Virus record (IMG/VR): IMGVR_UViG_3300032307_000369
Coordinates: 62,001 to 126,000 of that record
Strand: one strand, 5' to 3'
DNA: 64,000 nucleotides
Under the pieces are notes generated by a model. It was not told where the DNA came from, did not search any database, and worked only from the letters and a program-made list of their open reading frames with translations. Position 1 is the first letter of the stretch; each line of letters begins with the position of its first letter. Of this stretch, positions 433 to 42,154 are shown piece by piece. Both the position numbers and the translations under genes were made by a program.

Positions 433-519
433 ATGATTGATGATCGTTGGTTGCGCCCACTGTATTTTGCTTTGGGGTTTGCTGTTTGCTTCTTTCTTTT
501 TTCACAAGGTATTATTTAA
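433..519 (+). CDS. 28-aa single-TM peptide
   Basis: AAGGA SD then MIDDRWLRPLYFALGFAVCFFLFSQGII*; fills the gap before the SPFH gene. Confidence 0.55.
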   Translation: MIDDRWLRPLYFALGFAVCFFLFSQGII

Positions 520-520
520 A

Positions 521-6222: not shown

Positions 6223-6638
6223 AAATTGGATTTACATGTAGCACGTTTGATTTGTTTCATGCAGGGCATGTAATTATGCTTGAAGAAGCAAAGAAGCAAT
6301 GTGACTTTTTAATAGTAGGTTTACAAACTGACCCAACCATTGATAGACCCAATACTAAAAACAAACCGGTACAAGGTGTGTTTGAACGTTGGACCCAATT
6401 AAAGGCTTGCAAGTTTGTAGATCAAATTGTTCCATACAGTAGTGAAAAGGAATTGCTAGACCTATTGCAATCTTTTCCTATTGATGTTAGAATAATAGGT
6501 GAGGAATACAAAGACAAATCTTTTACTGGTGATCATTTAGATATGGATTACCATTTTAATGAAAGACGACATAGTTTTAGTACAACAGAATTGCGCCAAC
6601 GTGTGGTTGATGCAGAAAATAAAAAGGAAATAAAATGA
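6219..6638 (+). CDS. cytidylyltransferase (TagD/HIGH family)
   Basis: [18 protein letters not shown]...K.VD, FSTTELR. Confidence 0.85.
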
Positions 6639-7255
6639 GTTTAGTCCCAATGGTAGTTGAAAAAAGTAATCAAGGTGAACGAGCCTATGACATTTATAGT
6701 CGATTACTCAAAGACCGTGTTATATTTTTGAACGGCGAAGTAGAAGATTACATGGCAAATGTAATTATTGCACAACTACTATTCTTAGAAAGTGAGAATA
6801 GTGATTTGGATATTCACTTGTACATCAATAGTCCAGGCGGTAGCGTGAGTGCCGGTCTTGCAATTTATGACACTATGCAGTTCATCAAACCAGATGTATG
6901 TACGTATGTCATGGGTCAAGCCTGTAGTATGGGCAGTTTCCTAGCACAAGCGGGTGCTCCTGGCAAACGAGTAGTACTTCCAGAATCACGCACAATGATT
7001 CACCGTGTGAGCTCAGGTACACGCGGTACAAGTGGTAGTATTCACGTACAAGACTTGCAATTTGAAGATGCTAAACGTAGTTTTGAAGAAGCACAACGTA
7101 TCAACAAACGTCTAACAGAATTGTATGTACGTCATAATACAGTGGGCAAAACATACGAAGAGCTATTTGAAACTATGAAGTTTGATACTTTCTTGAGTGC
7201 CGCTGAAGCTGTTGCCAATGGTCTTGCTGATCAAGTGATTGCAAAACGTCCTTGA
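6635..7255 (+). CDS. clpP: Clp protease proteolytic subunit
   Basis: [31 protein letters not shown] (Ser), MIH (His), FDTFL (Asp). Confidence 0.95.
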
Positions 7256-8800: not shown

Positions 8801-9340
8801 ATGGCAAAATATCTTTCAACAAAAACATACGGCAATGATCGTGGACTTTCATGCTGTTTCAGACAGTGGCGTAGCACACATAGTCACTGCTCATTACTAC
8901 ACGGATATTCAATTGGTATTAAATTAATTTTTGAATCCGAGACACTAGATGATCGTAACTGGGTTATGGATTTTGGTGGACTAAAAGCATTCAAAGAGTG
9001 GAGCGAATACATGTTTGATCATACTTTGGTGCTTGGTGTTGATGATCCACATTTAGAAAAATTTAAAACACTTGCGGCACTTGGTCTTAATGATGTGGGC
9101 GGAGTTTGCGACATTCGTATCGTAGAAGCTGTAGGCTGTGAAAAATTTGCTGAATTGGCTTACAAAACTATGCAAGACATTTTGGAAACTTTCCAAAAGG
9201 GCGAAGGTTGGGAACTAAAAGACCAGTCTGGCAAAACATTAAAGTTGTTCGGTGCTCGTTATCCAGTTGGCGCAGGTGTTAAATTGCGTTCAGTAGAAGT
9301 TTTTGAACACGCCGGTAACAGTGCTGTTTATGAAGGATAA
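8801..9340 (+). CDS. queD: 6-carboxytetrahydropterin synthase / PTPS family
   Basis: HCSLLHGY, WVMDFGGLK, FDH, GCE, VEVFE. Confidence 0.85.
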   Translation: MAKYLSTKTYGNDRGLSCCFRQWRSTHSHCSLLHGYSIGIKLIFESETLDDRNWVMDFGGLKAFKEWSEYMFDHTLVLGVDDPHLEKFKTLAALGLNDVGGVCDIRIVEAVGCEKFAELAYKTMQDILETFQKGEGWELKDQSGKTLKLFGARYPVGAGVKLRSVEVFEHAGNSAVYEG

Positions 9341-9876: not shown

Positions 9877-9905
9877 TTGACATTCAAGGGCATAGATGTT
9901 ATTAT
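9877..9905 (+). promoter_or_regulatory. sigma70-type promoter
   Basis: TTGACA-N17-TATTAT. Confidence 0.65.
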
Positions 9906-9933
9906 AACACTATGTCCTTTTTTATTGGTTATT

Positions 9934-10950
9934 ATGATTAAACGTATAGGTTTCGCATGTAAGTGGATTGATCGCCCTGATCAAGTAGATGGTATCAAGC
10001 CAACCGACGATTGTAAGCAATATAACACTGGCGCTACCACCATTACTTGGTTAAATAAACAAACAAAAGAAGTTGCTGAACAAAAACTATGGGACCTAAT
10101 GGTCCAAAACTTAGAAGCAACACGATTACTTGTTGAAAGGGTAGGCAAACAACATGAAAGACTCCGCATGGTTCGCCTTAGTAGCGACATTCTTCCTGCT
10201 TATACCCAATCTGATTGGAGTTATTTTTGGAGTAAACCTGACGTTGTTGAGTATCTTGAACGCAATTTCATCCTTATTGGTGATAGTGCTCGTGCAAGCA
10301 ATACCCGTGTTTCTATGCATCCTGGTCAGTTTACTGTTCTTGCTAGTGATAATCCGGACATTGTTCGGAGAAGTATAGAGGAGTTTGAATATCATGCAGA
10401 TATGGTCAGGTACATGGGCTACGGTAAACAATTTCAAGACTTTAAAATTAATGTCCACATCTCGGGTAGAGCCGGTCCCGAAGGTATTCGAGCTGCCTAC
10501 AAAAAACTTTCCCCTGAAGCAAGAAATTGCATCACAATTGAAAACGAGGAAATGAGCCATGGGTTATCTACTTGCTTGTCTCTTGGTGATCTTCTTCCTA
10601 TCGTACTTGATATACATCATCACTGGATTAAAGAAGGTGAATACATCATGCCAAATGACCCAAAAGTACAGCAAGTACTTGACAGTTGGCGTGGTCTTCG
10701 CCCTACTATGCACTATAGTATTAGCAGGGAAGATGTGCTTGTTGATCACTGCACTCTAACTAAACCCAATCACGAAGCTCTTTTAGAGTCCGGATACAAA
10801 AAACAAAAACTTAGGGCACACAGTAACTTCTATTGGAATAAGGAAGTTAATGATTGGGCATTGAGTTTTAATGATCAATTTGATATCATGTGCGAGAGCA
10901 AGGCTAAAAATTTAGCCAGCAAAGCTCTTTTTGATTATTCCAATACATGA
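9934..10950 (+). CDS. uvsE: UV damage endonuclease
   Basis: RIGFAC, RLSSD, SMHPGQF.VL.S, INVH, IENEE, LDIHHH, HYS, RAHS, MCESKAK. Confidence 0.92.
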   Translation: MIKRIGFACKWIDRPDQVDGIKPTDDCKQYNTGATTITWLNKQTKEVAEQKLWDLMVQNLEATRLLVERVGKQHERLRMVRLSSDILPAYTQSDWSYFWSKPDVVEYLERNFILIGDSARASNTRVSMHPGQFTVLASDNPDIVRRSIEEFEYHADMVRYMGYGKQFQDFKINVHISGRAGPEGIRAAYKKLSPEARNCITIENEEMSHGLSTCLSLGDLLPIVLDIHHHWIKEGEYIMPNDPKVQQVLDSWRGLRPTMHYSISREDVLVDHCTLTKPNHEALLESGYKKQKLRAHSNFYWNKEVNDWALSFNDQFDIMCESKAKNLASKALFDYSNT

Positions 10951-11024: not shown

Positions 11025-11303
11025 TTACGAAGTCTTCTTAGGCGCCCTAGGTTTAGTACCAACTTTCTTTACAGCTGGTGCTTTTGCTGGGGCTTTTGGT
11101 TTTGGAGCTGCCTTAGGTTTTGCAGGTGCCTTAGCTTTAGCGGGAGCCTTTTTAGTTGCTGGCGCTTTTTTAGCTGGGACAATTGATTCAACCACAGCCT
11201 GAGTTGCTTGTTCTGCAACAGGTGCGGGTGTTTCAACTTTATAAGGAACTTCTGCTGTTACTGGCTTCTCTGAACCAAATAATGATTTTAGAAATTTAAT
11301 CAT
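11025..11303 (-). CDS. Ala/Lys/Pro-rich histone-H1-like protein
   Basis: AAGGAG SD; PAKKAPA repeats. Confidence 0.7.
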   Translation of the reverse strand: MIKFLKSLFGSEKPVTAEVPYKVETPAPVAEQATQAVVESIVPAKKAPATKKAPAKAKAPAKPKAAPKPKAPAKAPAVKKVGTKPRAPKKTS

Positions 11304-11396: not shown

Positions 11397-11425
11397 TTGA
11401 CTTAATGAGATATTGGTGCTACAAT
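11397..11425 (+). promoter_or_regulatory. sigma70-type promoter of the Fe-S operon
   Basis: TTGACT-N17-TACAAT with TGn extension. Confidence 0.7.
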
Positions 11426-11472
11426 AATGAATGTGGGCCACGAACTACAATAACAATAAGGTTCAATTAGTT

Positions 11473-12198
11473 ATGTTAAAAATTACAAATCTCTCCGTCA
11501 ATTACGACGTTATTCCAATTTTGGAAGATATCAATTTAGAAATCAACGAAGGCGAAATTCACGCTATTCTAGGACCAACAGGATCTGGAAAAAGTTCCTT
11601 GGCAAGTACAATAGCTGGTAAAACAGACCTCAGTGTTGTTAAAGGAAAAATAAACTTTAAAAGAAAATCTTTGAACAGTTTAAATCCAAATGAAAGAAGT
11701 AAGTTAGGAATTTTTACAACCTTTCAAGAACCTCCTGAAATTAATGGGATCACAAATTTAAATTTAACCAGACAAATTTTAAATGCTCGTAATGACAAAA
11801 GATCATCAACTGACATTATTAATGATTACAAAAGTTTAATAAAACAATTTGATCTAGGAAGCGAATGGTCCAATCGAGATTATAACGTAGGAGCAAGTGC
11901 AGGCGAAAAAAAGAAAAATGAAATTGTACAGTTACACATGCTCAATCCATCTCTTACAATTTTAGACGATATTGACAGTGGTTTAGACTTAGACACACTA
12001 ACCGAAGTATTTAAAAGTTTAAAAACTTTCCTATCACAAAAAGGAAAGGCAGCTATCATTATCACACATCAACCAACGATCCTTGAAGCAATCGAGCCCA
12101 CCCATGTGCATGTTATCATAGATGGAAGAATCGTAGAGTCAGGTGATAAGAAACTAATTAAAAGGATCATTTCAAATGGCTATCGAGAGTTTTCTTAA
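11473..12198 (+). CDS. sufC: SufC-like ABC ATPase (divergent)
   Basis: GEIHAILGPTGSGKSS, FQ.P.EI.G, S.GEKK.NEI.Q, ILDDIDSGLD, IITH. Confidence 0.85.
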   Translation: MLKITNLSVNYDVIPILEDINLEINEGEIHAILGPTGSGKSSLASTIAGKTDLSVVKGKINFKRKSLNSLNPNERSKLGIFTTFQEPPEINGITNLNLTRQILNARNDKRSSTDIINDYKSLIKQFDLGSEWSNRDYNVGASAGEKKKNEIVQLHMLNPSLTILDDIDSGLDLDTLTEVFKSLKTFLSQKGKAAIIITHQPTILEAIEPTHVHVIIDGRIVESGDKKLIKRIISNGYREFS

Positions 12199-13000
12199 AG
12201 TTGATTCACAAGACCCAGATTGGTCAAACAGTCCCACTCAGTACTTTGGTAAAAAATTTAAGGTCATTGATGCAAATTGCTTAATGATAAAAGAAAATAC
12301 TGATGACTTAATGGTTCTACGTATGAACCCAACTGAGTCAGATTTGCTGTGTAAAAATTTGCAAGTTCTTGGAAAAGATAGTAGTAGATTAGATTTGTTT
12401 ATTTTATGTGACGGATCTAAAAATACTCAACAGGTTTTTATTTACAATGTAACTGCTGAGCCAGATTCAATTATTAATATTGGAATTTTTGTTAAGGACG
12501 GAAAACTTAATAAGCATATTTTTGAATGTGAACTTTATGAGAATTCTGTTATTAACATTTTTGGTCTTGCAGAAAACGAAGTTGGTGGCAGTAGTGAAAT
12601 CATAAGCAAAGTTTACCATGCAGGTCCTTGTGCAGAGAGCAACACATTTGTAAACAGTATTGCTGGAAAAAATAGTCGAACTGTTTTTCAAGGCATTGTC
12701 AAAATTGAAGAAGACATGATAGACAGTGTTGCCAGTGTAACTAACACTAGTATTACATGTGATGAAACTGCCCAAGCATTTAGTACTCCGCAAATGATAA
12801 TTGATTGTGGACAAGTGAGAGCATATCATAACTGTGAAGTCAACACTGTTGACGAAAATAACATATGGTATTTAGAAAGCAGGGGAATTGATAGAAGTAG
12901 TGCTGAAACTCTATTAAAAACGTTGCATCAAGATAGTGTGTTGGACCTTGTTGAATATCAAGACATTAGAGATGAACTCAAAGATTTTTTCCAAAGTTAA
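12176..13000 (+). CDS. sufD: SufD/SufB-family beta-helix protein
   Basis: VFQG.VKI, S.PQM.I, AYH, WYLESRGI...A..L. Confidence 0.75.
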   Translation: MAIESFLKVDSQDPDWSNSPTQYFGKKFKVIDANCLMIKENTDDLMVLRMNPTESDLLCKNLQVLGKDSSRLDLFILCDGSKNTQQVFIYNVTAEPDSIINIGIFVKDGKLNKHIFECELYENSVINIFGLAENEVGGSSEIISKVYHAGPCAESNTFVNSIAGKNSRTVFQGIVKIEEDMIDSVASVTNTSITCDETAQAFSTPQMIIDCGQVRAYHNCEVNTVDENNIWYLESRGIDRSSAETLLKTLHQDSVLDLVEYQDIRDELKDFFQS

Positions 13001-14120
13001 AAGCGATTTTACTTTACCAGACAAAACATACTTAAACAGTGCATCACAAACTTTAATTCCTAATCAAGTAAAAAATTCCTACCTTGATATTTGTAATAAA
13101 ATTGATGCAAGGAAAGAGTATGAAAATGTTAGACAAAAAGTAAAACTACTAATTAATTCTAAAAAAGATAATGAAGTAGTTTTTACTCAAGGCAACAATC
13201 ATAGCATTAATATGATTGCCAAAAGTATTTGTCATAAATGGCATTCAAATGATTGTGTAATTGTTCCTGAAAGTGAGCATCATGCCAATTTACTCATTTG
13301 GCAATACATGTCAATTGAATACGGTTTTAGATTTGAAACTGTAAATGTTATCAAAGACGGCAGCATGGATCTTGGTCATCTTGAAGACTTGCTAGACAGT
13401 TGTGATGGTAAAATATTGTTCAGCATGAGTCACATATCCAACAGCATTGGATATGTACAGCCTGTTAAGAGTATTTTTGACAAGGTTAAAGAGTATGACG
13501 GAATAACTCTACTAGATGCAAGTTTGAGCATTGGTAGAGAATTGATAGATGTGCAAGAGTTTAATATTGATTTTCTAACATTTACTGGTCATAAATTTTA
13601 TGGTCCAACTGGTGTTGGTATATTATATGGCAAGCAAAAATATTTAGACAAGTTAGAGCCTACTATATTAGGCGACAGTAATAGCACATTATTACCATGG
13701 AAATTAGAAATTGGTAAACCTAATATTGCAAGTGTAGTTATGTTAGGTTCAGCAATTGATTGGTTTACATCATATGATTTAGAAAGTTTTCATACCTACG
13801 ATAAACTTATGAATGCAAATTTTCAAATGATGTTAAATGAATTAGACTTTGTAGAAATATTTCATCCTGGTTATTATAAGGGAGGATTAATTGGATTTAA
13901 TCTACATGGACACCATCCTGCGTATGTGGGTGAATTTTTGTCTAATGAAGGTATTGTATTAAAATATGGACATTTGAATGCAAGACCTATTGTAGAAGAA
14001 AAGTTCCCAAATGGTATACTTAGATTAAGTTGGGCCTGCTATAATACTAAAGAAGACGTTGAACAATTAAGGCAAGGACTTATAAAATTCTACGATAAAT
14101 ATAGTTCTAAAAGGACATAA
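12972..14120 (+). CDS. sufS: SufS-like class V PLP enzyme lacking the catalytic Cys
   Basis: EHHAN..WQ, HISN.IG, TGHKFYGPTGVG, R.S...YNT; GHLNA in place of GHHCA. Confidence 0.85.
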   Translation: MNSKIFSKVKSDFTLPDKTYLNSASQTLIPNQVKNSYLDICNKIDARKEYENVRQKVKLLINSKKDNEVVFTQGNNHSINMIAKSICHKWHSNDCVIVPESEHHANLLIWQYMSIEYGFRFETVNVIKDGSMDLGHLEDLLDSCDGKILFSMSHISNSIGYVQPVKSIFDKVKEYDGITLLDASLSIGRELIDVQEFNIDFLTFTGHKFYGPTGVGILYGKQKYLDKLEPTILGDSNSTLLPWKLEIGKPNIASVVMLGSAIDWFTSYDLESFHTYDKLMNANFQMMLNELDFVEIFHPGYYKGGLIGFNLHGHHPAYVGEFLSNEGIVLKYGHLNARPIVEEKFPNGILRLSWACYNTKEDVEQLRQGLIKFYDKYSSKRT

Positions 14121-14123: not shown

Positions 14124-14513
14124 ATGGCTTATTCTTCACAAGTAATTGATCATTATGAAAACCCTAGAAACGTAGGTTCATTTGATAAAAATGATAATGA
14201 TGTTGGAACTGGTATGGTTGGAGCTCCTGCTTGTGGTGACGTTATGAAATTGCAAATTAAAGTTAATGAACAAGGTATTATTGAAGATGCAAAGTTTAAA
14301 ACTTATGGGTGTGGTAGTGCTATTGCTAGTTCTAGTCTTGTCACCGAGTGGCTCAAGGGCAAGAACTTGGATGAGGCACAAGCCATTAAGAACTCAGATA
14401 TCGCTACTGAACTTGCGTTACCGCCCGTTAAGATTCACTGTTCAATATTAGCAGAAGATGCTATCAAAGCCGCAGTAGCAGATTATAAAGCTAAACATGA
14501 TAACACTATCTGA
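14124..14513 (+). CDS. iscU: Fe-S scaffold protein
   Basis: [32 protein letters not shown]; all ligands intact. Confidence 0.97.
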
Positions 14514-14817
14514 ACAAGCTGCCAATAGGGTAAAAGCAACTCTAGAAAAGCGTGGTAAAGGACTAGGGATTAGATTAGGGGTCAAAACTACAGGTTGTAG
14601 TGGCATGGCCTATATGATAGAATTTGTAGATACTCCTACCACTGATGATATGAGCTTTGTTAGTTACGGAGTTCATGTGTTTGTAGATCCAAAAAGTTTA
14701 GCATACCTTGATGGTGTACAAGTGGAATGGGTTAAGAAAGGTCTTAATGAAGGCTTTGATTTTACCAATCCTAACGAACGTGATCGTTGTGGTTGCGGGG
14801 AAAGTTTTAGAGTTTAA
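14497..14817 (+). CDS. iscA: A-type Fe-S carrier
   Basis: [12 protein letters not shown]...CGCGESF. Confidence 0.95.
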
Positions 14818-15101
14818 ATCTTTCCAATTGGCAAAGTACTGCTAACTGGCATATCCCATATTTTTCTTTTAGTAATGCCCATTCGTTGGGCAAATTTTTT
14901 GACGTCACAATCACCACATACGTGGAAATATTTGTTGCTGAGTCTTTTGGGATCTATTTTAGCATGATCTCTTGTAAAATCCTTGTCGCAATTGTCACAG
15001 CGAAACACATTGATTGTTTTTGTTCTAGTATACTGGTGTTCTTTTCCCAGTTTACTGCTTCGAACATACTTGGAAATTTCTTTAAAAGATCTTATGAACA
15101 T
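14814..15101 (-). CDS. small Zn-ribbon protein
   Basis: CDNC...CGDC; TAAATA 5 nt before ATG. Confidence 0.7.
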
Positions 15102-15182
15102 GCCATTATTTACATTAAGTTTATAAAACTATAAGGTAAATAAAGTGGACAGTTGGTATATCACCCAAATTTGGAGTTAATA

Positions 15183-18100
15183 ATGGCAAGAAAAGACGTT
15201 AATATTGGTTTAACAGGTAACGATGGAACAGGTGACAGCATACGTGATGCGTTTTCCAAAGTTAATGCAAATTTCCAAGAACTTTACGCTAGTCAAGGTC
15301 TAGAGGCCGGACTAACATTTGATAACTTAGTTGACGTTATCAAACCACTTAGACCTAACACAGTTTTAGGCTTAGACAGCTTAGGAAAAACTATTGTTAG
15401 TAGAGATTTAGAAGCGGCTGTTGGTATTAGTATTGACACCGTCAGTGATCCGTCTAAGATAATCTTTAGTATTGCCAACGTTCAAATTAGACAAGACCCA
15501 ACACCAACACTGTCAAACGTACTAGATGGAAGTGGGTTCAAACTAAGTTTCATTGGTGATCCAGAAAATGACCAAGATGCTGTTACTAGAAAATGGGTAT
15601 ACCAAAATTTCTTAAACAGAGATAACATTGACAAGTTAGGTACATTTGACCTAGCCGCTGGCAGTGTCATGCGTCAAAATTTCAAGATCAGTCCAACTCC
15701 AGATAACGGCAATATTAATGCTGGTACAAAAATTATTAATGTTTTTGGTTCAGATGGCGTTACACCAAAAACTGATGTTCAGTTAAAGTTTCAAGCAACA
15801 CACCCTGCTCATGCAACTCGAAAAGATTATGTAGATACCAAGCTGTCATTACAAGGTACTGAGACATTAGATCCAGCAACTGGCTTTGTAAACAAAGGCA
15901 TGGGTGTGATGACAGGTCCATTGATTTTAAATGATCACCCTGGACAGTATGTTGAAATTGATAGGAAGCCAGATGGCACACTGTTCGTACAAGAAGATTA
16001 TAGAGCAGCCACAAGAGGGTATGTTGATTCCAAAACGTATTCTGCCGCAGGTAACATATTTGTCAGTACAAAAGGTAATGACGACATGTGGGATTTTGAC
16101 AACAATCGTCCAAATCCCATTTATGGATATCCTGAGGAAGAAATTGGACGTAGTTGGAGTAAAGCATTTAAATCAGTAAATGCCGCGTGTCGTTATGCAA
16201 CACGAATTATAGATGCTGTTGAATTACAAAATATTCCATATCAAGTTACTCCACAACAAATTTCACGTTGGGCTCCTCCATTTACAACGCCAATTACAAG
16301 TCCAAGAACTCGTGTGCGTGTTAGCTTACAAAATCACGGATTCAAAGATGGAGACTACGTTTTAGTTAGCGGAGCTATCTTAGGATCTTTAGACACAAGA
16401 AATTTAAACGGTATTCACAGAGTTAATGCGTTAGATGTTAACAATTTTGAATTAAATTTAAAATCACTGGTAACATGGCCAAATCCAGAAGTTGCACCTG
16501 GCGGCACTATTAGTATTTCGTTGGCTAATAAAAAGGACGGTCCTTACAGTGAAATTTCTAAGGTTGACTTTGGCTTTAGAGGATTCTTTGTACCAAAACC
16601 TGAAATTACTATTATGGTTGAATCAGGAGTTTACTTTGAAGAAGCTCCTATGTTTGTTCCACCAAACTGTGCTATTAAGGGCGATGAATTTAGACGTACT
16701 TTAATTAAACCAAAGCCAGGACCAGTTAATCCTGATAATCAGCTTACTAAATTTGTTCGTGGTGATAGAAGTCAAAGTGCTACCTTTTGGTATAACTCAC
16801 ACTACTACAATCAATTGTCAAGATCAGTTGGAACCACTAACGTGGTTGGTAGTACAAAATTAGAAATTAAAAATAGTCCTTATAGACCAAAGAGTGGTAT
16901 GCGATTTATTGTGGGTACTCTTGGTGGTATACCAAACGTATATCGAGTTGGACGTGAAGTTAACATTGTTTACAAAGAACCAAATCCAGATTTAAATATT
17001 GCTCCTGGAACATATATCATGGACATCGTTGATGACAACGGTGATCCAAAACCATTGGCAACTGGTATTCCAGATTCAACAACTATAGAATTCTTGTTAG
17101 ACCACGAACACTGTGATGCCATGCTTGTTGCTGATGCATTCCAGTTGCGTAATATAACAGTTATAGGATTTAAGGGCTTTGCTATGGCCTTTGATCCTAA
17201 GAGACAAATTAAAACACGTTCTCCTTATGCTCAAGTTGGCGCTGTATTTGCTGGAGAAGGTGGTGGTGGTCAGTTGGTTGACGGTATGTCTGGTAACCAA
17301 GTATGTTATGTATTAGACACTAGTTATACTGATCCGTTTACTGGAACACAAGGTTCTAGTGGACTTAAAATGACTGTTACTGGATTAGTACGTACTCCTG
17401 AAACTCCAAATACATTTTTCTTGGCTAAGAAAAAATATGTCATTATCGATTCCACAACTCCAGATTCCAACGGTACTGCTACATTAACTTTAAGTACTAC
17501 AACTCCAATTGAAGTTGATGATACTTATTTGCCTGCAGGTTTTATTCCAAACGGTTCTCAAATTTTAATTGAAACTGCTGGTAACCGATCAATGTTGTCT
17601 AACGACTTTACCATGATTAACGATTTAGGTTATGGTCTTGTGTGTGAAAATAACGGTGTTGCAGAAGCAGTTAGTCAATTTACATACTATTGCCGTGCCA
17701 GCTATTTGTCTAGATCAGGTGGACAAATTCGTTCGGTAACAGGATCAAGTTGCTATGGTATTATTGGTTTACAATCTGAAGGTAGCGATCCTAACGAAGC
17801 TATTCAGATTGGTAGAATTAAAACTGACATTGGTAACATCATGCAGGTTTACATTGATGATCCTAGTGCAGATGGCAACCAAGGTGCCGTAAGTTTGGTA
17901 ATGGGAGGTTTGGCAAGTAAGCCTATAAGAAACTCTACATTCAAATTAACCAAACACGAAATCATTATTAAAAATATTGCTCGAGCAAGATTGAGTGGTG
18001 GTACACTAACAACTGGGCCGCTAGTTGTAACAACATATTATCCTCATCCTTTCTCAACTGGAGAGAGTGTACAAATGACCAGTGTGAGAGGATTGCAATT

Positions 18101-21100
18101 GCCTGCAATTCCTCCAAGTACTACCCCAAGAGCAACTGATGTTGATGGAAGAGTTTATACTATTACTTCTGTTAACAGTCACACGTTTACATTAGATGGA
18201 AGTGAAAGCACTAATTATATAAATGATTTAGGAACTTATAATTTTGCTGACTTACCAGCTCGTGCTATATCTAATCTAGTAATTGGAGCACAAGATGTTG
18301 TGTTTTCAATTAAGGGAGATCCTAGTCCATCTAATATTACAGGTAGAGCTAGATTTGATGGCATTCCAGGCGAAAACCAAGCTGGACAAAATGTATTAAA
18401 ACTTCAACGACTACAGCGTCCAGCTGTTGTTGGAATGAAAACAACTATTCCTGGCGGAGTGTTGACCTACACTGTAACTGATGTTACTGAAAAAGTAGTT
18501 ACATTTAAACCATCTCCAAGACCAGCACCTACTGGTGACAATGATAATAAAATTGGTGCACAAACCATTTATATCTACACCACTACAGATATAACTACAG
18601 GTGCTATTAATGGCACAACACTTACTGCTACTAATTTAGATCAAAATAATGTTGGACAATTAGTCACAGGAGCCACTGTAGCTGACAACACATACATTAT
18701 AGCAGTGACCAGTCCTACAACAGCGACTGTGTCAATAAGTCAAACTGTTACTAACAGAACTTTAGAATTAAGTTGGGTTCCTAAAATAGGCTGGAGTTTC
18801 CAGCATTTAGACACCAACATGGGTCTACAGTTAAATTATACTAGATATACAATTACTGATACTCCAGTATATGATGCTGTATCAAATAGATGGGCTGTTA
18901 CCTTAGATGTTCCGCTAACAGTCAATATGCAAAATCAAGAAGCAACTGGTCAAACGACTATTGTTGACGGAATTTGGGACGTTACTTTAAACTATGATTT
19001 AGAAACAAGCATCGCTAACAGTGTAAACCCAGTATCATTTACGTTTGTTGATTCGTATTGGGTTACAAGCATTGATCCGTCATTGACCAACCCAATACCT
19101 ACTGTTACTGATGAATACAATAGAGTACGTGCTCGTAAGATTAATTTATATCAGCAAAAGACAATTAGTGTAAGTCAAATTTTAAACAGACCTGCTATTA
19201 TTAACAGCTCTGCTTTAAGATTCTCATCTTCAAACTATGATCCAAGTATATATCGTATTTTAGGTAAAACTTCTGATGGCGGTATTACACAAGATAGATA
19301 TGCTGTTACTACTACTATAAATCCACTTAGTGGTCTTAATACGAATGCTGTAGAGAAAGTATTAGCAAACAAAACTTGGATACAGTCTGAAGTTATTAAT
19401 TACTTGGCTACAATTTATCCTAATTTCCAATACAATGTTAACACTTGTTATCGTGACGTTGGATATATTATCGATGCAGTACTTTATGACTTAACTTACG
19501 GCGGTAACGTAAGAAGCCGTGCCGCTGGTATTAGTTATTACCAACAAGGTAATCCAAGTGCGGCTCTTGTATTAAGTCAGCAAAAAGTAGAAACAATTGA
19601 TGCAATTAATTTTGCGACCACTGCGGCAATAACTGCCTTAAATCAATATAGTGGCGCAACAGTACCTCAATTACAACTACCATATCGTGGAAGTAATTTA
19701 AACGGTGTTGCACAATTACAGGCAAATAAACTGTTTATACAAGATGAAGTTATTGCATTCTTAGCACAAACATATCCTACTTTACAGTTCAATCAAACTA
19801 CTTGTCGTAGAGACGTTGGATTGATTATTGATGCTGTTGCATACGATTTAGAGTATGGTGGTAACGTGGCAACTAGAACGGCTGCTCTAGCATACTATGA
19901 TGGATCAACAAGCTCACAGTATGTGTTGTCTAATCAAAAAACCCAAACCATTGCTGCCATTAACAGAGCATCTACAGTTGCTCAACAAATTGTTTTAGAA
20001 ACTGCTGTAACTGCGACTGCTGGCAACACTGCAACACAAAATACTGCTGGTACTCCTGGAGTTGCTGGTGTTGATGACGTAAGAGTTCAAACATTAATGA
20101 ACATTATTACTAATGTTCTACAAAATGGTACTTCTGTTGCTCCAACTAGAAATTTAGGAATTAGAAGAAGTTATCAAGATCCTCTAGGTGTAGAGTATGC
20201 CCCACAAAGTATTGACAGTGGCATTGTAGCAGAAGCCGGTGCTGCCACAGCATTGCAAGCTCTAATGGACCAAATTGTAGCCATAATTGAATTTGGCACT
20301 ACAGGCCCGCATGTTGTTGTACAGCCACAAGTGTTAGATACTTTACAGGCAATTGATTTCCCACCAACTGCAACATCATTACAATATGGCGCAGTATTAA
20401 CTGGTCCTGGAATTCCTAAAGCAGGAGTTAACGGCGTTACCGAAGATACATTTATTAGAACAGTGACTCAATTGTTTGATGAAAATCAAAATACAATTGG
20501 CTACAGAGCTAGAATTAGTGCGCCAGTAACACAAGCAATTCCTGCTGGTACAGAAATTGTTATTACTGGTCCTGGTAGTGACTTCTTATTTGATCTAAAC
20601 ACTCCACTAGACCTTAGACACTTAGCAGGCGATGTAATTGGTATCACTACCACATTCTCAACTGTACGTGCAACTGGTCATGATTTCTTAAACGTTGGGG
20701 CAGGTGGATATGATGACTCTAACTATCCTAATAACGTTTATGGTCAACCAGTTAATACGCCATCTGACAGTGCAATTGCTAAAGAGGTTGGGACTGGTCG
20801 TGTGTTCCACGTGTCAACTGATCAAAATGGTAATTTTAGAGTAGGTAGCTTCTTTAACGTTAACCAAGGTGACGGATCTGTTAGTATTAGTGCTAAAATT
20901 GGTTTAAGTGCTGTTACAAGTTTAAGTTTCTTAACTGGTGCAACCGTTAACCAATTCTCAACTGATTCTAAGTTAGACGACAATAGTGACAACATTGTTT
21001 CTACACAAAAGGCAATGAAGACCTACATCAATAACTTGATTGACGGTCGTTTTACAATTGACAATACTGATACTCCACAACGTGGTCTATTAAGACTTGA

Positions 21101-23717
21101 CGGCGAAAGTATCATGGTTGGTGATTTAGATGTTGGTTTGAACAGTGTTGAACGTATAGTAAACAGTCCAAACAATGACGGCAGTGTTAATAGAAAGTAT
21201 GTTGACAATGTGTTTGCTGGTGGATCTATTGATTACGATGGTTCTTATGCAATTGAAACAACTGGTCGTAGAACAGATGTATTAGCGTTCACTATGATAA
21301 CTGACAACACATCAGTTGGTGGTGTTCCAAATAATAGGGGTGGAATTGATCTTAATGACAATAAGATACAACGCCTAAAATCTCCAACTGAATTGACCGA
21401 TGCAGCCAACAGAGCGTATGTTGATCAAACAATTGCTACAGGCGGTGTAAGATTAGGTTGGACTGGATTCACTCTTTCTAATACTAATATAAGAAATACA
21501 GTATCTAGCATAAGCATGGTAAACAACGGTGGAGGATATCTTGTTCCACCAGCAGTTGTACTTTATTCTACTAGTGGTACTGGTGCTGCCGCAAGAGCAG
21601 TATTAACTGCTGGTACTGGTGCTAGAAGCGTTAATAATATTATTGTTGATATTGGTGGCTATGGATACACAGAAGCTCCAATTGTTATTATTGGCGGTAG
21701 TGTCTCTAACGTCAACGTAAACAACTCTGGAACTGGATATAGCAGTGCTCCAACACTAACATTTAGTGCTCCTCCAGTTGGCGGCATTAGAGCTACTGGT
21801 TATGCAGTCATGCAGGGAAGTGGCTCAAATCAAATTATTAGTAGCATTGTAATTACAAATGCTGGTGTAGGATATACTCTTGCACCAACTATTGCATTGA
21901 GCGGTGGAGGTTCACCTACTGTAAATGCAATTATTACTGCTGTCCTACAAGCAGGATCAGGCGCAACTGCTACAGCAAGTATCACTGCTACTCAAAGAAA
22001 TATTGATTTAAATGGCAACAAGGTCACTGGTTCAGCAGACCCAACACAAAATACAGATTTAGTAACATTAAATTATTTTAATACTAAAAACTTTATTGGT
22101 GAGATTGCCGATGTAACCATAACCAATGTTCCTGGAAGCGGAGATTTATTGGTCTTTACAGGTACTGTACCAGCTGGAAGTAAAGGGGCTATGGTCAACG
22201 TAGCTGTTGATTCTTCTAGCGATATTTCTTTTGTAAGAAGTGCCAATACAATCACTGTTAATATTAAAGATAATGCTATTATTGATAGTAACATTGCTCC
22301 AAATGCCGCAATACAACAGACTAAGCTATTGTTAAATCGAGCAAATGCTGTAGTTGAAGGTGCTGGCGCAGGTGTTGGTGACTTTGGTATAGTAGCTGTT
22401 AACTCTGCTGAATTTATTAGTGACAGTGGATTAATTAAACTTCGTCAGTCAGAAAATAAAAACACTGGTGTTCGTTTAGATAGAATGCAACAGATTACAA
22501 ACTATCGAATACTAGGAAGATATAATTCTACTGAAAGTGAAACTTCTGTTGGACCAGTAACTGAAGTTCCAGTTGGGGACTTAAAACAATTACTAGGACT
22601 AAGTGCTGCCACAGTTCAAGTGCTTATTAGTGATGATATTTTGGGTGGTAGACAAGTTGACAGCGGCAATCCGTTAAGTCCATTACTTGCTACTAACTGG
22701 AATGGTAGTGCATCTTTTGGTGCTCTACTAAGACGTGGTGGCACAATGATTGGTAAGATTGTTATGACTGATGCTGGCGGATTGCCAGCAGGTGATCCAA
22801 ACATTACTCCAATTATTGGTGTAGGTGCAGGTCTCACAGACAAGTTAGACATTGGTACTAGCGCATTACGTTTCCAAAGTGTGTATGCTAAAAACCATTT
22901 TGGTGATGTTTTCCGAGGAACAACATTTGGAAGCGCAACTGCTCCAACAAGTCAAGGTGGTGGTGCAATATTTAATGGTACTGCTACATTTGCTGGAAGT
23001 TCTGGTGCCTTACAATACGCACTAGTAACTCCTGTAGGTGGTGATCTTGCTCTTAGAGTAGGAGCAAACAATGTAACCTTTAATGGAAGTCAAGAAGTTA
23101 CAATTAGCGTTTTAGCAGAAACTGGCACTGTAAACAATAGTCTTGTAAGAAGAACTAGTGATGGTCAAATTAATGCAAGTCAGTTTAATGGTCCGCTAAC
23201 TGGGTTAGCCACAAGTGCTACTAATTTAAGATTAGGAACAACTGACTATCCTGCAAGTGATAGTGCAAGCAGTACTTCAGTTCCATTACGTATTAATGGA
23301 GTGATAAAGGCTACAACATTTGAAGGTAAGGCAACTAGTGCTAACTATGCTGACTTGGCTGAGAATTATCAAGCAGACTTTGCATATGAGCCAGGAACAG
23401 TACTTGAGTTTGGTGGTGCATACGAAGTAACTATTGCGCAAGACGAAACTAGAAAAGTGGCTGGCGTTGTTTCAACAAACCCAGCGCATTTAATGAATAC
23501 TGAATTACAAGGAGAAAATGTCGTAGCACTTGCACTGCAAGGTCGTGTTCCATGTAAAGTACGTGGTAAAATTAGTAAAGGCGACTTGATGACTAGTGCT
23601 GGCGGCGGGTATGCTCGTCCAACACACGATCCAAAAATTGGAACAATAATTGGAAAAGCGTTAGAGGACTTTGATGGTGTTGAAGGTGTCATTGAAGTAG
23701 TTGTTGGAAGATTGTAA
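15183..23717 (+). CDS. giant tail fibre / baseplate-attached adhesin (~2840 aa)
   Basis: gp9/gp10-like N-terminus NIG...NDGTGD.IR.AF.KVN.NF; A.TR.YVD neck motifs; beta-helix-like region; G.GY..AP repeats; C-terminal ADLAENY autoproteolytic chaperone-like domain. Confidence 0.8.
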   Translation: MARKDVNIGLTGNDGTGDSIRDAFSKVNANFQELYASQGLEAGLTFDNLVDVIKPLRPNTVLGLDSLGKTIVSRDLEAAVGISIDTVSDPSKIIFSIANVQIRQDPTPTLSNVLDGSGFKLSFIGDPENDQDAVTRKWVYQNFLNRDNIDKLGTFDLAAGSVMRQNFKISPTPDNGNINAGTKIINVFGSDGVTPKTDVQLKFQATHPAHATRKDYVDTKLSLQGTETLDPATGFVNKGMGVMTGPLILNDHPGQYVEIDRKPDGTLFVQEDYRAATRGYVDSKTYSAAGNIFVSTKGNDDMWDFDNNRPNPIYGYPEEEIGRSWSKAFKSVNAACRYATRIIDAVELQNIPYQVTPQQISRWAPPFTTPITSPRTRVRVSLQNHGFKDGDYVLVSGAILGSLDTRNLNGIHRVNALDVNNFELNLKSLVTWPNPEVAPGGTISISLANKKDGPYSEISKVDFGFRGFFVPKPEITIMVESGVYFEEAPMFVPPNCAIKGDEFRRTLIKPKPGPVNPDNQLTKFVRGDRSQSATFWYNSHYYNQLSRSVGTTNVVGSTKLEIKNSPYRPKSGMRFIVGTLGGIPNVYRVGREVNIVYKEPNPDLNIAPGTYIMDIVDDNGDPKPLATGIPDSTTIEFLLDHEHCDAMLVADAFQLRNITVIGFKGFAMAFDPKRQIKTRSPYAQVGAVFAGEGGGGQLVDGMSGNQVCYVLDTSYTDPFTGTQGSSGLKMTVTGLVRTPETPNTFFLAKKKYVIIDSTTPDSNGTATLTLSTTTPIEVDDTYLPAGFIPNGSQILIETAGNRSMLSNDFTMINDLGYGLVCENNGVAEAVSQFTYYCRASYLSRSGGQIRSVTGSSCYGIIGLQSEGSDPNEAIQIGRIKTDIGNIMQVYIDDPSADGNQGAVSLVMGGLASKPIRNSTFKLTKHEIIIKNIARARLSGGTLTTGPLVVTTYYPHPFSTGESVQMTSVRGLQLPAIPPSTTPRATDVDGRVYTITSVNSHTFTLDGSESTNYINDLGTYNFADLPARAISNLVIGAQDVVFSIKGDPSPSNITGRARFDGIPGENQAGQNVLKLQRLQRPAVVGMKTTIPGGVLTYTVTDVTEKVVTFKPSPRPAPTGDNDNKIGAQTIYIYTTTDITTGAINGTTLTATNLDQNNVGQLVTGATVADNTYIIAVTSPTTATVSISQTVTNRTLELSWVPKIGWSFQHLDTNMGLQLNYTRYTITDTPVYDAVSNRWAVTLDVPLTVNMQNQEATGQTTIVDGIWDVTLNYDLETSIANSVNPVSFTFVDSYWVTSIDPSLTNPIPTVTDEYNRVRARKINLYQQKTISVSQILNRPAIINSSALRFSSSNYDPSIYRILGKTSDGGITQDRYAVTTTINPLSGLNTNAVEKVLANKTWIQSEVINYLATIYPNFQYNVNTCYRDVGYIIDAVLYDLTYGGNVRSRAAGISYYQQGNPSAALVLSQQKVETIDAINFATTAAITALNQYSGATVPQLQLPYRGSNLNGVAQLQANKLFIQDEVIAFLAQTYPTLQFNQTTCRRDVGLIIDAVAYDLEYGGNVATRTAALAYYDGSTSSQYVLSNQKTQTIAAINRASTVAQQIVLETAVTATAGNTATQNTAGTPGVAGVDDVRVQTLMNIITNVLQNGTSVAPTRNLGIRRSYQDPLGVEYAPQSIDSGIVAEAGAATALQALMDQIVAIIEFGTTGPHVVVQPQVLDTLQAIDFPPTATSLQYGAVLTGPGIPKAGVNGVTEDTFIRTVTQLFDENQNTIGYRARISAPVTQAIPAGTEIVITGPGSDFLFDLNTPLDLRHLAGDVIGITTTFSTVRATGHDFLNVGAGGYDDSNYPNNVYGQPVNTPSDSAIAKEVGTGRVFHVSTDQNGNFRVGSFFNVNQGDGSVSISAKIGLSAVTSLSFLTGATVNQFSTDSKLDDNSDNIVSTQKAMKTYINNLIDGRFTIDNTDTPQRGLLRLDGESIMVGDLDVGLNSVERIVNSPNNDGSVNRKYVDNVFAGGSIDYDGSYAIETTGRRTDVLAFTMITDNTSVGGVPNNRGGIDLNDNKIQRLKSPTELTDAANRAYVDQTIATGGVRLGWTGFTLSNTNIRNTVSSISMVNNGGGYLVPPAVVLYSTSGTGAAARAVLTAGTGARSVNNIIVDIGGYGYTEAPIVIIGGSVSNVNVNNSGTGYSSAPTLTFSAPPVGGIRATGYAVMQGSGSNQIISSIVITNAGVGYTLAPTIALSGGGSPTVNAIITAVLQAGSGATATASITATQRNIDLNGNKVTGSADPTQNTDLVTLNYFNTKNFIGEIADVTITNVPGSGDLLVFTGTVPAGSKGAMVNVAVDSSSDISFVRSANTITVNIKDNAIIDSNIAPNAAIQQTKLLLNRANAVVEGAGAGVGDFGIVAVNSAEFISDSGLIKLRQSENKNTGVRLDRMQQITNYRILGRYNSTESETSVGPVTEVPVGDLKQLLGLSAATVQVLISDDILGGRQVDSGNPLSPLLATNWNGSASFGALLRRGGTMIGKIVMTDAGGLPAGDPNITPIIGVGAGLTDKLDIGTSALRFQSVYAKNHFGDVFRGTTFGSATAPTSQGGGAIFNGTATFAGSSGALQYALVTPVGGDLALRVGANNVTFNGSQEVTISVLAETGTVNNSLVRRTSDGQINASQFNGPLTGLATSATNLRLGTTDYPASDSASSTSVPLRINGVIKATTFEGKATSANYADLAENYQADFAYEPGTVLEFGGAYEVTIAQDETRKVAGVVSTNPAHLMNTELQGENVVALALQGRVPCKVRGKISKGDLMTSAGGGYARPTHDPKIGTIIGKALEDFDGVEGVIEVVVGRL

Positions 23718-36462: not shown

Positions 36463-36464
<2 letters not shown>
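36440..36464. terminator. bidirectional intrinsic terminator
   Basis: aaaaggggc-acaag-gcccctttttt between convergent genes. Confidence 0.9.
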
Positions 36465-38549
<2,085 letters not shown>

Positions 38550-42148: not shown

Positions 42149-42154
42149 AGTGTT

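What the first reader, a model, noticed from the sequence alone, without database searches (positions are those of the whole stretch)
12972..14120. SufS-like protein keeps the PLP lysine but has Asn at the catalytic cysteine
Seen: KYGHLNARP (AAT at 13977) where SufS/CsdA enzymes have R.GHHCA.P. TGHKFYGP, EHHAN and the C-terminal Arg are kept; DGAQ has become DASL and EAGTP has become EIGKP. The ORF is full length. Established: this Cys (Cys364 in E. coli SufS) carries the persulfide and is essential for desulfurase activity, while selenocysteine lyase activity largely does not need it. Inference: a pseudo-desulfurase that could be a dominant-negative decoy for host SufS/SufE, a Sec or cystine lyase, or a repurposed PLP enzyme.
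Basis: partly seen in the sequence, partly recalled or inferred. Interest (0 to 1): 0.8.

Follow-up and report, generated by a model that had tools for sequence, protein, structure and literature searches.

The report
Phage SufS relic without catalytic cysteine
A giant freshwater phage carries a copy of the sulfur-mobilising enzyme SufS that has lost its catalytic cysteine and its partner-docking loops yet is still kept by selection, which marks a stage in the step-by-step decay of a phage-borne iron-sulfur cluster assembly operon.

Summary
ORF 12972-14120 (382 aa) has the SufS fold, keeps the PLP lysine (K208) and has Asn (AAT, 13977-13979) where all 232 cellular homologues sampled have Cys.

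It also missed R359K. All three are SufE-coupling elements.

The genome is a jumbo myovirus, on a 245.5-kb IMG/VR contig. Its closest relatives (46-54% identity, phage or metagenome contigs only) keep Cys and sit in complete sufB-C-D-S-E-T-A operons.

The Cys-less forms are one nested clade. Their operons lost sufB, sufE and sufT, and most gained iscU-iscA. Within that clade the PLP lysine was lost at least twice, SufC's ATPase motifs also decay, one copy is broken, and distant phages keep only sufCD.

The window's gene is still under strong purifying selection (dN/dS 0.04-0.05). Its remodelled PLP pocket is invariant across its subclade.

Best reading: a pseudo-desulfurase kept as a non-persulfide-forming partner of SufC-SufD, with phage IscU-IscA as scaffold and carrier and host IscS as the sulfur source. 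A residual Cys-independent PLP activity is not excluded. A SufE decoy is unlikely.

Verdict: new variant of a known kind, moderately interesting.

The parts
11397..11425 (+). Promoter-like site (TTGACT, 17 nt, TACAAT, with TG) just upstream of the module
   Evidence: This is a consensus match only; the number of such sites in the region is not above the shuffle expectation.
11431..12198 (+). sufC (ABC ATPase). The conserved start is probably the ATG at 11473 (MLKITNL). Walker B catalytic Glu has become Asp (ILDD), and the signature SGGE has become SAGE.
   Evidence: Pfam ABC_tran. NCBIfam SufC scores 255, above the cutoff of 212.8. Motifs are read from the alignment.
12176..13000 (+). Short sufD (274 aa, SUFBD core). 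It overlaps sufC by 23 nt and sufS* by 29 nt. The His360 equivalent is kept.
   Evidence: It is the most conserved gene of the module (dN/dS 0.02-0.05).
12972..14120 (+). sufS* (382 aa): SufS fold, PLP Lys kept, catalytic Cys replaced by Asn
   Evidence: AF2 model pLDDT 91.2 and pTM 0.90. Foldseek best match is E. coli SufS, TM 0.92. NCBIfam SufS scores 273.6, below the cutoff of 475.1.
13110..13115 (+). Junction (R47|K48) where 13 residues of the alpha3-alpha4 loop (ANIHRGxH..., H55/R56) are missing
   Evidence: Alignment A1. Role of the loop from PMC11507941.
13593..13595 (+). AAA, Lys208 (equivalent of E. coli SufS K226, the PLP Schiff-base lysine)
13677..13682 (+). Junction (S236|N237) where 10 residues of the type II beta-hairpin are missing
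   Evidence: Role of the hairpin from PMC8918507.
13977..13979 (+). AAT, Asn336 at the position of the persulfide-forming Cys (E. coli C364)
14124..14513 (+). iscU (129 aa). It is a true IscU, not SufU: the three Cys, D39, H105 and LPPVK are all present.
   Evidence: NCBIfam IscU scores 228.3, above the cutoff of 192.4; SufU scores only 66.4, below its cutoff of 92.5.
14497..14817 (+). iscA (A-type carrier, 106 aa, three Cys present). It overlaps iscU by 17 nt.
   Evidence: NCBIfam IscA scores 161, above the cutoff of 150.6.
14876..14892 (+). Terminator-like hairpin followed by a T-run, after iscA
   Evidence: consensus match only.

Best explanation
The gene is a SufS-derived pseudo-desulfurase. 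It is one stage in the reductive evolution of a SUF iron-sulfur assembly operon that an ancestor of this jumbo-phage group carried complete (sufB-C-D-S-E-T-A).

In the window's lineage sufB (scaffold), sufE (persulfide acceptor) and sufT were lost, and an iscU-iscA cassette (ISC scaffold plus A-type carrier) sits in their place. Once the acceptor was gone, the parts of SufS that exist only to make and hand over a persulfide were lost: the Cys, the alpha3-alpha4 loop with H55/R56, the beta-hairpin, and R359.

The protein is nevertheless kept by strong purifying selection. It is translationally coupled to sufD.

Inferred mechanism: it no longer mobilises sulfur by the persulfide route. It works as a non-catalytic or ligand-binding subunit together with SufC-SufD. 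New clusters are built on phage IscU/IscA, with sulfur supplied by the host's own desulfurase (IscS).

In the window's subclade a remodelled PLP pocket is still conserved. PLP is probably still bound, as a structural cofactor or small-molecule sensor, or for a minor Cys-independent reaction.

Shown: the residue states, the deletions, the operon contexts, the phylogeny and the selection.
Inferred: complex formation with SufCD, dependence on host IscS, and the role of the pocket.
For: 1. Identity and fold.

2. Loss of persulfide machinery: C364N, R359K and both deletions. The literature ties these elements to persulfide formation and transfer to SufE.

3. Context. Seven Cys-bearing relatives sit in sufB-C-D-S-E-T-A. 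All Cys-less relatives lack sufB, sufE and sufT. Those whose downstream DNA was recovered have sufC-sufD-sufS*-iscU-iscA, except P0025. P0025 (Cys to Ser) has sufC-sufD-sufS* alone. No sufB, sufE or second class-V enzyme is present in the 64-kb window. No sufB hit falls on the window's contig.

4. Polarity. The phage clade is monophyletic (100/100). The Cys-bearing lineages form a basal grade, and the Cys-less forms are one nested clade (81/91; 99/89 without P0025). The SufD tree agrees.

5. Selection.
- dN/dS of sufS* is 0.037 (CI 0.017-0.062) and 0.049 (0.029-0.076).
- This is no higher than in Cys-bearing pairs (0.040).
- There is no acceleration relative to sufD.
- A lineage with no Lys and no Cys gives 0.086 (0.054-0.129).

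6. PLP chemistry is not needed for the shared role. Lys was lost at least twice inside the clade, and the pocket residues are scrambled there.

7. The window subclade's pocket is conserved. All 12 pocket positions are invariant in 11 sequences that have only 46.6% invariant columns overall (P about 9e-5, not corrected for phylogeny).

8. Coupling to sufD. The genes overlap by 29 nt. sufD is followed by a sufS or sufS* gene in every locus of the clade that holds sufS.
Against: No experiment or complex prediction links SufS* to SufC-SufD, and co-retention and gene overlap are weak evidence of physical interaction.

SufS* is not indispensable in the wider group. A 334-aa version exists (L202). 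Its near-identical relative L270 has the gene split in two. Twelve distant jumbo contigs keep sufCD with no sufS at all. Part of the signal could therefore be slow decay rather than a new role.

The invariant Lys/His/Asp/Arg pocket in the window's subclade is just what a still-active PLP enzyme would show.

The link between Cys loss and operon remodelling is essentially one evolutionary event, so the correlation has n of about 1.

The host and its Fe-S systems are unknown.
Confidence: 0.5

Rival explanations
1. It is a still-active PLP enzyme with a Cys-independent reaction. Candidates are selenocysteine lyase, cysteine sulfinate desulfinase, a C-DES-like cystine lyase, or a 'split' desulfurase. 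In the split case the loss of the two lids opens the pocket, so that a Cys of the adjacent IscU attacks the PLP-bound cysteine directly.
For: Lys208, H103/H104 (H123/H124), N157, D182, H207 and R351 are kept, and together with five derived residues they are invariant across the subclade. The C364A variant of E. coli SufS still forms the Cys-aldimine (PDB 6o11, listed; PMC11507941). That SufS without this Cys retains Sec lyase and sulfinate desulfinase activity is my recollection of the CsdB literature and was not checked here. iscU lies 3 nt downstream.
Against: Q203 has become L, the phosphate-loop GTT has become GNN, T278 has become K and R359 has become K, so cofactor and substrate contacts are altered. 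R359K alone halves the basal rate and cuts SufE-stimulated turnover about tenfold in E. coli SufS. Sister lineages in the same operon context lost Lys at least twice and are still under purifying selection. The NCBIfam SclA model scores 103.9 against a cutoff of 525.
Confidence: 0.25
2. It is a decoy or dominant-negative factor. It titrates host SufE or SufS, or acts with dead SufC/SufD on host SufB, to shut down the host SUF pathway and redirect iron and sulfur to the phage's ISC-type scaffold.
For: Catalytic residues decay in SufS* and also in SufC while the folds are kept under selection. That pattern is typical of pseudoenzymes that act by binding.
Against: The SufE-docking elements, the alpha3-alpha4 loop and the beta-hairpin/latch, are deleted. 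Identity to cellular SufS is only about 30%, which makes heterodimers unlikely. It is not known whether the host has a SUF system at all.
Confidence: 0.1
3. It is a functionless relic on its way to loss. Its apparent conservation reflects only recent common ancestry or constraint from the overlapping sufD frame.
For: The wider group shows every stage of loss: a shrunken 334-aa form (L202), a split gene (L270), and sufCD-only phages.
Against: dN/dS is 0.04-0.05 with dS of 0.4-0.8 over the whole 382 codons, and the CI excludes 1 by far. Only 29 nt overlap sufD. ORFs are intact in 16 distinct sequences down to 35% identity. The evolutionary rate relative to sufD is not raised in the window's subclade.
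Confidence: 0.05

Closest known systems
Type II cysteine desulfurase SufS (E. coli SufS/CsdB, B. subtilis SufS)
   Same: It has the same fold (Foldseek TM 0.92). It shares the PLP Lys, H123/H124, D200, N175, H225 and R379 equivalents and the short type II active-site loop. It lies downstream of sufC-sufD.
   Different: - The catalytic Cys is Asn.
- The alpha3-alpha4 loop and the beta-hairpin are missing.
- R359 is K, Q203 is L and T278 is K.
- No SufE or SufU partner gene is present.
- It scores below NCBIfam's SufS cutoff.
[quoted passage not shown]
   Same: It is a natural desulfurase homologue without desulfurase activity, encoded with IscU and proposed to act only as a scaffold partner (PMC8918507).
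   Different: AfIscS is type I. It lost the PLP Lys (Asp199) but keeps the Cys, which is proposed as a cluster ligand. The window protein is type II, keeps Lys and lost Cys. Its Lys-less sister lineages have lost both.
Engineered E. coli SufS C364A, and the Sec-lyase activity of CsdB
   Same: It has the same single functional defect at the persulfide site. C364A traps the Cys-aldimine (PDB 6o11).
   Different: The phage protein carries additional natural changes: two deletions and four pocket substitutions. Those changes are fixed and conserved in its subclade.
C-DES, the Cys-less NifS-like cystine C-S lyase of Synechocystis (from my own knowledge, not tested here)
   Same: It is a class-V PLP enzyme lacking the nucleophilic Cys that can still deliver sulfur, as cysteine persulfide from cystine.
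   Different: It is not a close relative. No C-DES chain appears among the 60 listed of the 83 PDB matches. The window protein descends from a bona fide SufS within a SUF operon.
Fe-S assembly auxiliary metabolic genes of phages (sufE, nifU/iscU, iscA in viromes)
   Same: Single Fe-S assembly genes are known phage cargo (PMC8940887). The iscU-iscA cassette here is widespread, with 597 viral-contig hits.
   Different: Here there is a whole SUF operon in jumbo phages, together with its decayed derivatives. My searches of the paper library found no description of this.

Membership tests
SufS (type II cysteine desulfurase) | Class-V aminotransferase fold, homologous to SufS | tested here: met
   Pfam PF00266 at 1.1e-78. 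PDB SufS chains at about 5e-53. AF2 pLDDT 91.2 and Foldseek TM 0.92 to E. coli SufS.
SufS (type II cysteine desulfurase) | PLP Schiff-base lysine (K226) | tested here: met
   K208 lies in TGHKFYGP and aligns to the HK of SufS.
SufS (type II cysteine desulfurase) | Nucleophilic Cys in the active-site loop (C364), one of four strictly conserved residues (PMC8918507) | tested here: not met
   It is Asn336, AAT at 13977-13979. 232 of 232 non-clade homologues have Cys.
SufS (type II cysteine desulfurase) | Type II beta-hairpin near the active site | tested here: not met
   There is a 10-residue gap after S236 against both cellular SufS and the Cys-bearing phage relatives.
SufS (type II cysteine desulfurase) | Alpha3-alpha4 loop with H55/R56, and R359 | tested here: not met
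   There is a 13-residue gap that removes ANIHRGxH, and R359 has become K331. Roles are from PMC11507941.
SufS (type II cysteine desulfurase) | Curated family score (NCBIfam TIGR01979, cutoff 475.1 bits) | tested here: not met
   It scores 273.6 bits. The Cys-bearing phage relative L008 scores 432.1 bits, which is also below the cutoff.
SufS (type II cysteine desulfurase) | Dedicated sulfur acceptor (SufE or SufU) encoded with it | tested here: not met
   There is no SufE hit in the window. The downstream gene is IscU (228.3 bits, above 192.4), not SufU (66.4 bits, below 92.5).
SufS (type II cysteine desulfurase) | Cysteine desulfurase activity | not testable with these tools
   This needs an enzyme assay.
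Selenocysteine lyase / Cys-independent PLP lyase | Intact PLP pocket (Lys, His, Asp, Arg) able to form an external aldimine | tested here: inconclusive
   Seven ancestral pocket residues are kept and invariant in the subclade. Q203L, T278K, R359K and GTT to GNN alter cofactor and substrate contacts. The SclA model scores 103.9 against a cutoff of 525.
Inactive desulfurase paralog acting as IscU partner (AfIscS-like) | Loss of a catalytic residue with retention under selection, encoded next to iscU | tested here: met
   Cys is lost, dN/dS is 0.04-0.05, and iscU starts 3 nt after the stop codon.
Inactive desulfurase paralog acting as IscU partner (AfIscS-like) | Type I enzyme that keeps the loop Cys as a cluster ligand and forms an (IscS-IscU)2 complex | tested here: not met
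   It is of type II descent and its Cys is replaced. Complex formation is not testable here.

The most novel reading that the evidence does not exclude
SufC, SufD and SufS* of these jumbo phages form a conserved complex that has given up both of its enzymatic activities, ATP hydrolysis and persulfide formation, and has been exapted for a new, binding-based job. Candidate jobs are a chaperone or iron-loading factor for the adjacent giant tail-fibre/baseplate proteins, and a takeover device for host Fe-S biogenesis. Alternatively, the window's variant is a 'split desulfurase' in which an opened PLP pocket uses a cysteine of IscU as the nucleophile.
Probability: 0.15. Interest if true: 0.8.

Novelty: new variant of a known kind. 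Interest (0 to 1): 0.6.

Why it matters
Cysteine desulfurases are the entry point of sulfur into Fe-S clusters, and their persulfide Cys is treated as strictly conserved. This is a natural series of one SufS lineage caught at successive stages:
- a complete enzyme in a full SUF operon;
- Cys lost with a conserved remodelled PLP pocket (the window);
- Lys lost as well;
- a truncated form, then a broken gene;
- the gene gone, with only SufCD left.

The series shows which parts of SufS exist only for the persulfide relay to SufE, because they disappear together with sufE. It also shows that the rest of the protein, and a motif-decayed SufC-SufD, are worth keeping for some other reason.

For phage biology it documents complete SUF operons as jumbo-phage cargo, and their replacement by a mobile iscU-iscA cassette. 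For annotation it is a warning: 'cysteine desulfurase' labels on such viral genes are wrong in the functional sense.

Tried and rejected
1. Raw-read check of the codon. Only Logan contigs were available. X1 matches with 0 differences but may be the source. Support for Asn therefore comes from independent assemblies.

2. DNA-level search of GenBank phages. Only iscU/iscA gave hits, in records that look like bacterial contamination. No cultured relative carries this gene; the DNA polymerase points to the Atu_ph07 / Phosso / SCTP-2 / GAP32-type jumbo myoviruses.

3. Search of one genome per GTDB species. Nothing is above 34% identity, so recent acquisition from a sequenced cell is rejected.

4. 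A substitute Cys.
- C355 (WACYNT) is also present in the Cys-bearing relatives and is His in P0006-8.
- C95 is subclade-specific, but by alignment it lies eight residues upstream of H103.
- Distances could not be measured because model coordinates are not returned.

5. SufU identity of the downstream gene is rejected. LPPVK and His-Cys are present, and the IscU model passes its cutoff while the SufU model does not.

6. Second desulfurase. A profile search of all six-frame ORFs of the window found only this gene. The rest of the 245-kb contig could not be read in full.

7. A statistical test of 'Cys loss goes with iscU gain' was not attempted. It is a single clade, so there is effectively one event.

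8. Some SufC dN/dS values (pairs with L016 or L011) come from frame-offset HSP starts and were ignored.

9. Literature searches for phage SUF operons and for Cys-less SufS pseudoenzymes found nothing specific.
Full report
**1. The observation**

The + strand ORF 12972-14120 encodes 382 residues. All homologues begin at this ATG (M-x-S-K-x-F-S), not at the upstream GTG. The evidence that it is a SufS relative is:
- Pfam Aminotran_5 at 1.1e-78.
- Best solved relatives are SufS of S. aureus, B. subtilis and E. coli, at E about 5e-53.

In those alignments the SufS active-site motif GHHCAqP lies over GHLNArP. This puts Asn336 (AAT, 13977-13979) at E. coli C364, and Lys208 (AAA, 13593-13595) at K226.

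- A 13-residue gap after R47 removes the ANIHRGxH segment. This is the alpha3-alpha4 loop with H55 and R56.
- A 10-residue gap after S236 removes the type II beta-hairpin.
- R359 is Lys, Q203 is Leu and T278 is Lys.
- The phosphate-loop GTT is GNN.

An AlphaFold2 model built on 31 clade sequences is confident (pLDDT 91.2, pTM 0.90). It superposes on E. coli SufS with TM 0.92. The fold is therefore intact.

The Asn is not an error:
- Cys to Asn needs two base changes.
- Six other independent assemblies have Asn, with both AAT and AAC.
- All 232 homologues outside the clade keep Cys and Lys.
- Only assembled contigs, not raw reads, could be laid on the gene. One spans it without a difference but may be the source sample.

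**2. What genome and what neighbourhood**

The window belongs to IMG/VR contig UViG_3300032307_000369, which is 245,550 bp. It encodes:
- a T4-type DNA polymerase closest (42-50%) to jumbo myoviruses such as Phosso, Atu_ph07, SCTP-2 and GAP32;
- tail-fibre proteins, ClpP, Lon, DnaJ, PhoH and other genes.

The runs that hold the sequence are mostly freshwater or lake metagenomes.

The gene is the third of five tightly packed, partly overlapping genes:
- sufC, 11431-12198;
- a short sufD, 12176-13000;
- sufS*, 12972-14120;
- iscU, 14124-14513;
- iscA, 14497-14817.

A promoter-like site lies in front (11397-11425) and a terminator-like hairpin behind (14876-14892). Both are consensus matches only.

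IscU is a genuine IscU, with LPPVK and His-Cys. It passes NCBIfam's IscU cutoff and fails the SufU cutoff. No sufB, sufE or second class-V enzyme is in the window. A scan for sufB found 23 viral loci, none on this contig.

**3. Relatives and the direction of change**

Close relatives exist only on viral and metagenomic contigs:
- The best match among one genome per 185,579 species is 34%.
- In a 1.84-billion-protein representative library the clade is four clusters at 425 bits or more. The next hit is at 268 bits.

Relatives at 46-57% identity (about 401-414 aa) keep Cys, Lys, Gln, the loop and the hairpin. In every such locus examined the gene sits in a complete operon: sufB (474 aa), sufC, sufD (276 aa), sufS, sufE, sufT, sufA.

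Relatives without Cys all lack sufB, sufE and sufT:
- Loci L003-L006, L013, L014, L149, L152, L154, L155 and L157 carry sufC-sufD-sufS*-iscU-iscA. The short contigs L007 and L012 end at sufS*.
- P0025 has Cys replaced by Ser and the hairpin kept. It has only sufC-sufD-sufS*.

In a maximum-likelihood tree rooted on cellular SufS:
- The phage clade is monophyletic (100/100).
- The Cys-bearing lineages form the basal grade.
- All Cys-less sequences form one nested clade (81/91; 99/89 without P0025).
- The PLP Lys was lost at least twice inside it: P0009/10 have Thr, and P0027 plus P0030-33 have Asn.

A SufD tree gives the same nesting. The full operon with an active-looking SufS is therefore ancestral, and the window's state is derived.

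The elements lost from SufS are the ones that the literature assigns to persulfide formation and to the 'close-approach' transfer to SufE. These are C364, the alpha3-alpha4 loop (residues 50-59), the beta-latch/hairpin and R359 (PMC11507941; PMC8918507). They disappeared in the lineage that lost sufE.

**4. Is it still under selection?**

Yes. Nei-Gojobori dN/dS for sufS*:

| Pair | State | dN/dS | 95% bootstrap CI | dS |
|---|---|---|---|---|
| L001-L012 | Cys-less, Lys kept | 0.037 | 0.017-0.062 | 0.44 |
| L001-L003 | Cys-less, Lys kept | 0.049 | 0.029-0.076 | 0.82 |
| L149-L155 | no Lys, no Cys | 0.086 | 0.054-0.129 | 0.97 |
| L008-L009 | Cys-bearing | 0.040 | 0.022-0.058 | 1.46 |

The ratio of dN in sufS to dN in sufD is 1.2-2.7 in the window's subclade and 1.8-3.1 in Cys-bearing pairs. 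Constraint has therefore not relaxed there.

Sixteen distinct Cys-less sequences, down to 35% identity, keep open frames.

Within the window's subclade there are 11 distinct sequences at 65-99% identity, with 46.6% invariant columns. All 12 pocket positions are invariant:
- seven ancestral: H103, H104, N157, D182, H207, K208, R351;
- five derived: L185, T205, K249, K331, N336.

The hypergeometric P is about 9e-5, without phylogenetic correction. In the Lys-less lineages the same positions are scrambled.

**5. The wider pattern of decay**

SufC shows parallel erosion:

| Motif | Cys-bearing phages | Window's subclade | Other Cys-less lineages |
|---|---|---|---|
| Signature | SGGE | SAGE or STGE | lost in all |
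| Walker B | ILDE | ILDD (catalytic Glu to Asp) | Gln, Ser or Cys; only L152 keeps Glu |
| H-loop | His present | His present | His lost |

The GxxxxGK[ST] P-loop persists throughout. SufC dN/dS stays at 0.06-0.08.

SufD is the best-conserved gene (0.02-0.05). It keeps the His360 equivalent in the window and loses it in L149, L152, L154 and L014.

Further along the series:
- L202-type phages have a 334-aa SufS* without Lys, Cys or the N-terminal 50 residues.
- The near-identical L270 has it split into two ORFs.
- Twelve distant jumbo contigs keep only sufC-sufD in the same place, between a UvdE-like gene and the tail-fibre genes.

In the SufD tree these sufCD-only phages form one clade at the unresolved base of the phage group, beside a full-SUF lineage.

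The iscU-iscA cassette is widespread and mobile:
- It gives 597 viral-contig hits, mostly without sufCDS.
- L001 and L003 share 93-96% identity in SufC, SufD and SufS, but only 64% in IscA.
- An unrelated contig (L182) has an IscA 92% identical to the window's.

**6. How it most likely works**

Shown: the protein cannot form the enzyme-bound persulfide and has lost the SufE interface. It is nevertheless selected. It is co-inherited and translationally coupled with sufD.

Inferred: de novo cluster assembly in infected cells now runs on phage IscU and IscA, with sulfur from the host's own desulfurase. IscU is the natural partner of IscS. SufS* persists as a non-persulfide-forming subunit acting with SufC-SufD.

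In the window's subclade the conserved remodelled pocket suggests PLP is still bound. I put about 0.5 on this reading.

The rivals, with my confidence in each:
- Cys-independent PLP reaction, or persulfide formation in trans on IscU, about 0.25. The invariant pocket supports it. The altered cofactor contacts and the Lys-less sisters count against it.
- Decoy, about 0.1. It is weakened by deletion of the SufE-docking elements.
- Functionless relic, about 0.05. The dN/dS values contradict it for this subclade.

**7. Comparison with what is known**

By descent and fold it is a SufS. It fails the defining features of the enzyme family:
- no Cys, hairpin, alpha3-alpha4 loop or R359;
- no acceptor gene;
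- 273.6 bits against NCBIfam's cutoff of 475.1.

The nearest functional precedent is the inactive IscS paralog of Archaeoglobus fulgidus. That protein lost the PLP Lys, keeps the Cys and is thought to serve only as IscU's scaffold partner (PMC8918507). The window protein is the mirror image in a type II enzyme, and it is encoded by a phage.

Single Fe-S assembly genes are known phage cargo (PMC8940887). My library searches did not find a description of complete phage SUF operons or of their Cys-less derivatives. Absence from that library is not proof of novelty.

**8. Verdict**

- It is a new variant of a known kind: a natural pseudo-desulfurase.
- Interest is 0.6.

Noticed in passing
window 11431-12198 (sufC); L149, L152, L154, L155, L157, L007, L202, L273: SufC's ATPase motifs decay in step with SufS. 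In the window's subclade the Walker B catalytic Glu is Asp and the signature SGGE is SAGE or STGE. In other Cys-less lineages Glu becomes Gln, Ser or Cys, the H-loop His is lost and the signature is gone. The P-loop GK[ST] and purifying selection (dN/dS 0.06-0.08) persist.
   Followed up: partly
L273-L284 (e.g. L273:4295-5825): Twelve distant jumbo-phage contigs keep only a sufC-sufD pair (34-45% identity), with no sufS, sufB or iscU. The pair sits in the same slot, between a UvdE-like endonuclease and tail-fibre genes. The persistent unit of this module is SufCD, and its role there is unexplained.
   Followed up: partly
L202:4086-5090 and L270:1049-2028: A 334-aa SufS* lacks Lys, Cys and the N-terminal 50 residues. 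It is followed by a superoxide-dismutase-like gene and an ErpA-like gene before iscU-iscA. In the near-identical L270 the sufS* frame is split into 108-aa and 171-aa ORFs, which is either a pseudogene or an assembly error.
   Followed up: partly
window 14124-14817; L003, L182: The iscU-iscA cassette looks mobile. L001 and L003 share 93-96% identity in SufC, SufD and SufS but only 88% in IscU and 64% in IscA. The unrelated contig L182, which has no sufCDS, carries IscU at 91% and IscA at 92% identity to the window's. 597 viral contigs matched IscU.
   Followed up: partly
window 12176-13000 (sufD); L149, L152, L154, L014: The equivalent of E. coli SufD His360 is kept in the window and in the Cys-bearing phages. 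It is Gln or Asn in several Cys-less lineages.
   Followed up: partly
window 14814-15101 (-): A 95-aa ORF with two CxxC pairs (zinc-ribbon-like) lies on the opposite strand. It is conserved between the Fe-S module and the giant tail-fibre gene in nearly all clade loci that reach that far, whether full-SUF or decayed (L008, L149, L151, L155, L202; not found in L010 or in sufCD-only L273). It has no family match.
   Followed up: no
window 11025-11303 (-): A 92-aa Ala/Lys/Pro-rich basic ORF lies upstream of sufC on the opposite strand. Similar ORFs hold the same position in L202 and L273. It has no Pfam match.
   Followed up: no
window 15153-23717, 23755-27171, 27175-31416 (+): Three very large ORFs (2854, 1138 and 1413 aa) follow the module. 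The 1138-aa ORF has a weak match to a PHROGs tail-fibre family. A faint T4 gp9/10 N-terminal hit is on record for the homologue of the first in L155. The N-terminal motif GNDGTGDSIRDAF recurs in the tail-fibre-like ORF of L273.
   Followed up: no
window 437-1315, 6635-7255, 8801-9340, 9877-10950, 36463-37233 (-), 42137-42997, 43502-45784: The phage encodes an SPFH/Band 7 protein, ClpP, a PTPS/QueD-like enzyme, a UvdE-type endonuclease, PhoH, a full DnaJ and a Lon-type protease. This is a rich proteostasis set. QueD hints at a 7-deazaguanine pathway, whose QueE would be an Fe-S client.
   Followed up: no
window 11431-11473: The longest sufC ORF starts at 11431, but all homologues start at the Met of MLKITNL (11473). 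The promoter-like site ends at 11425, so the real start is probably 11473.
   Followed up: partly
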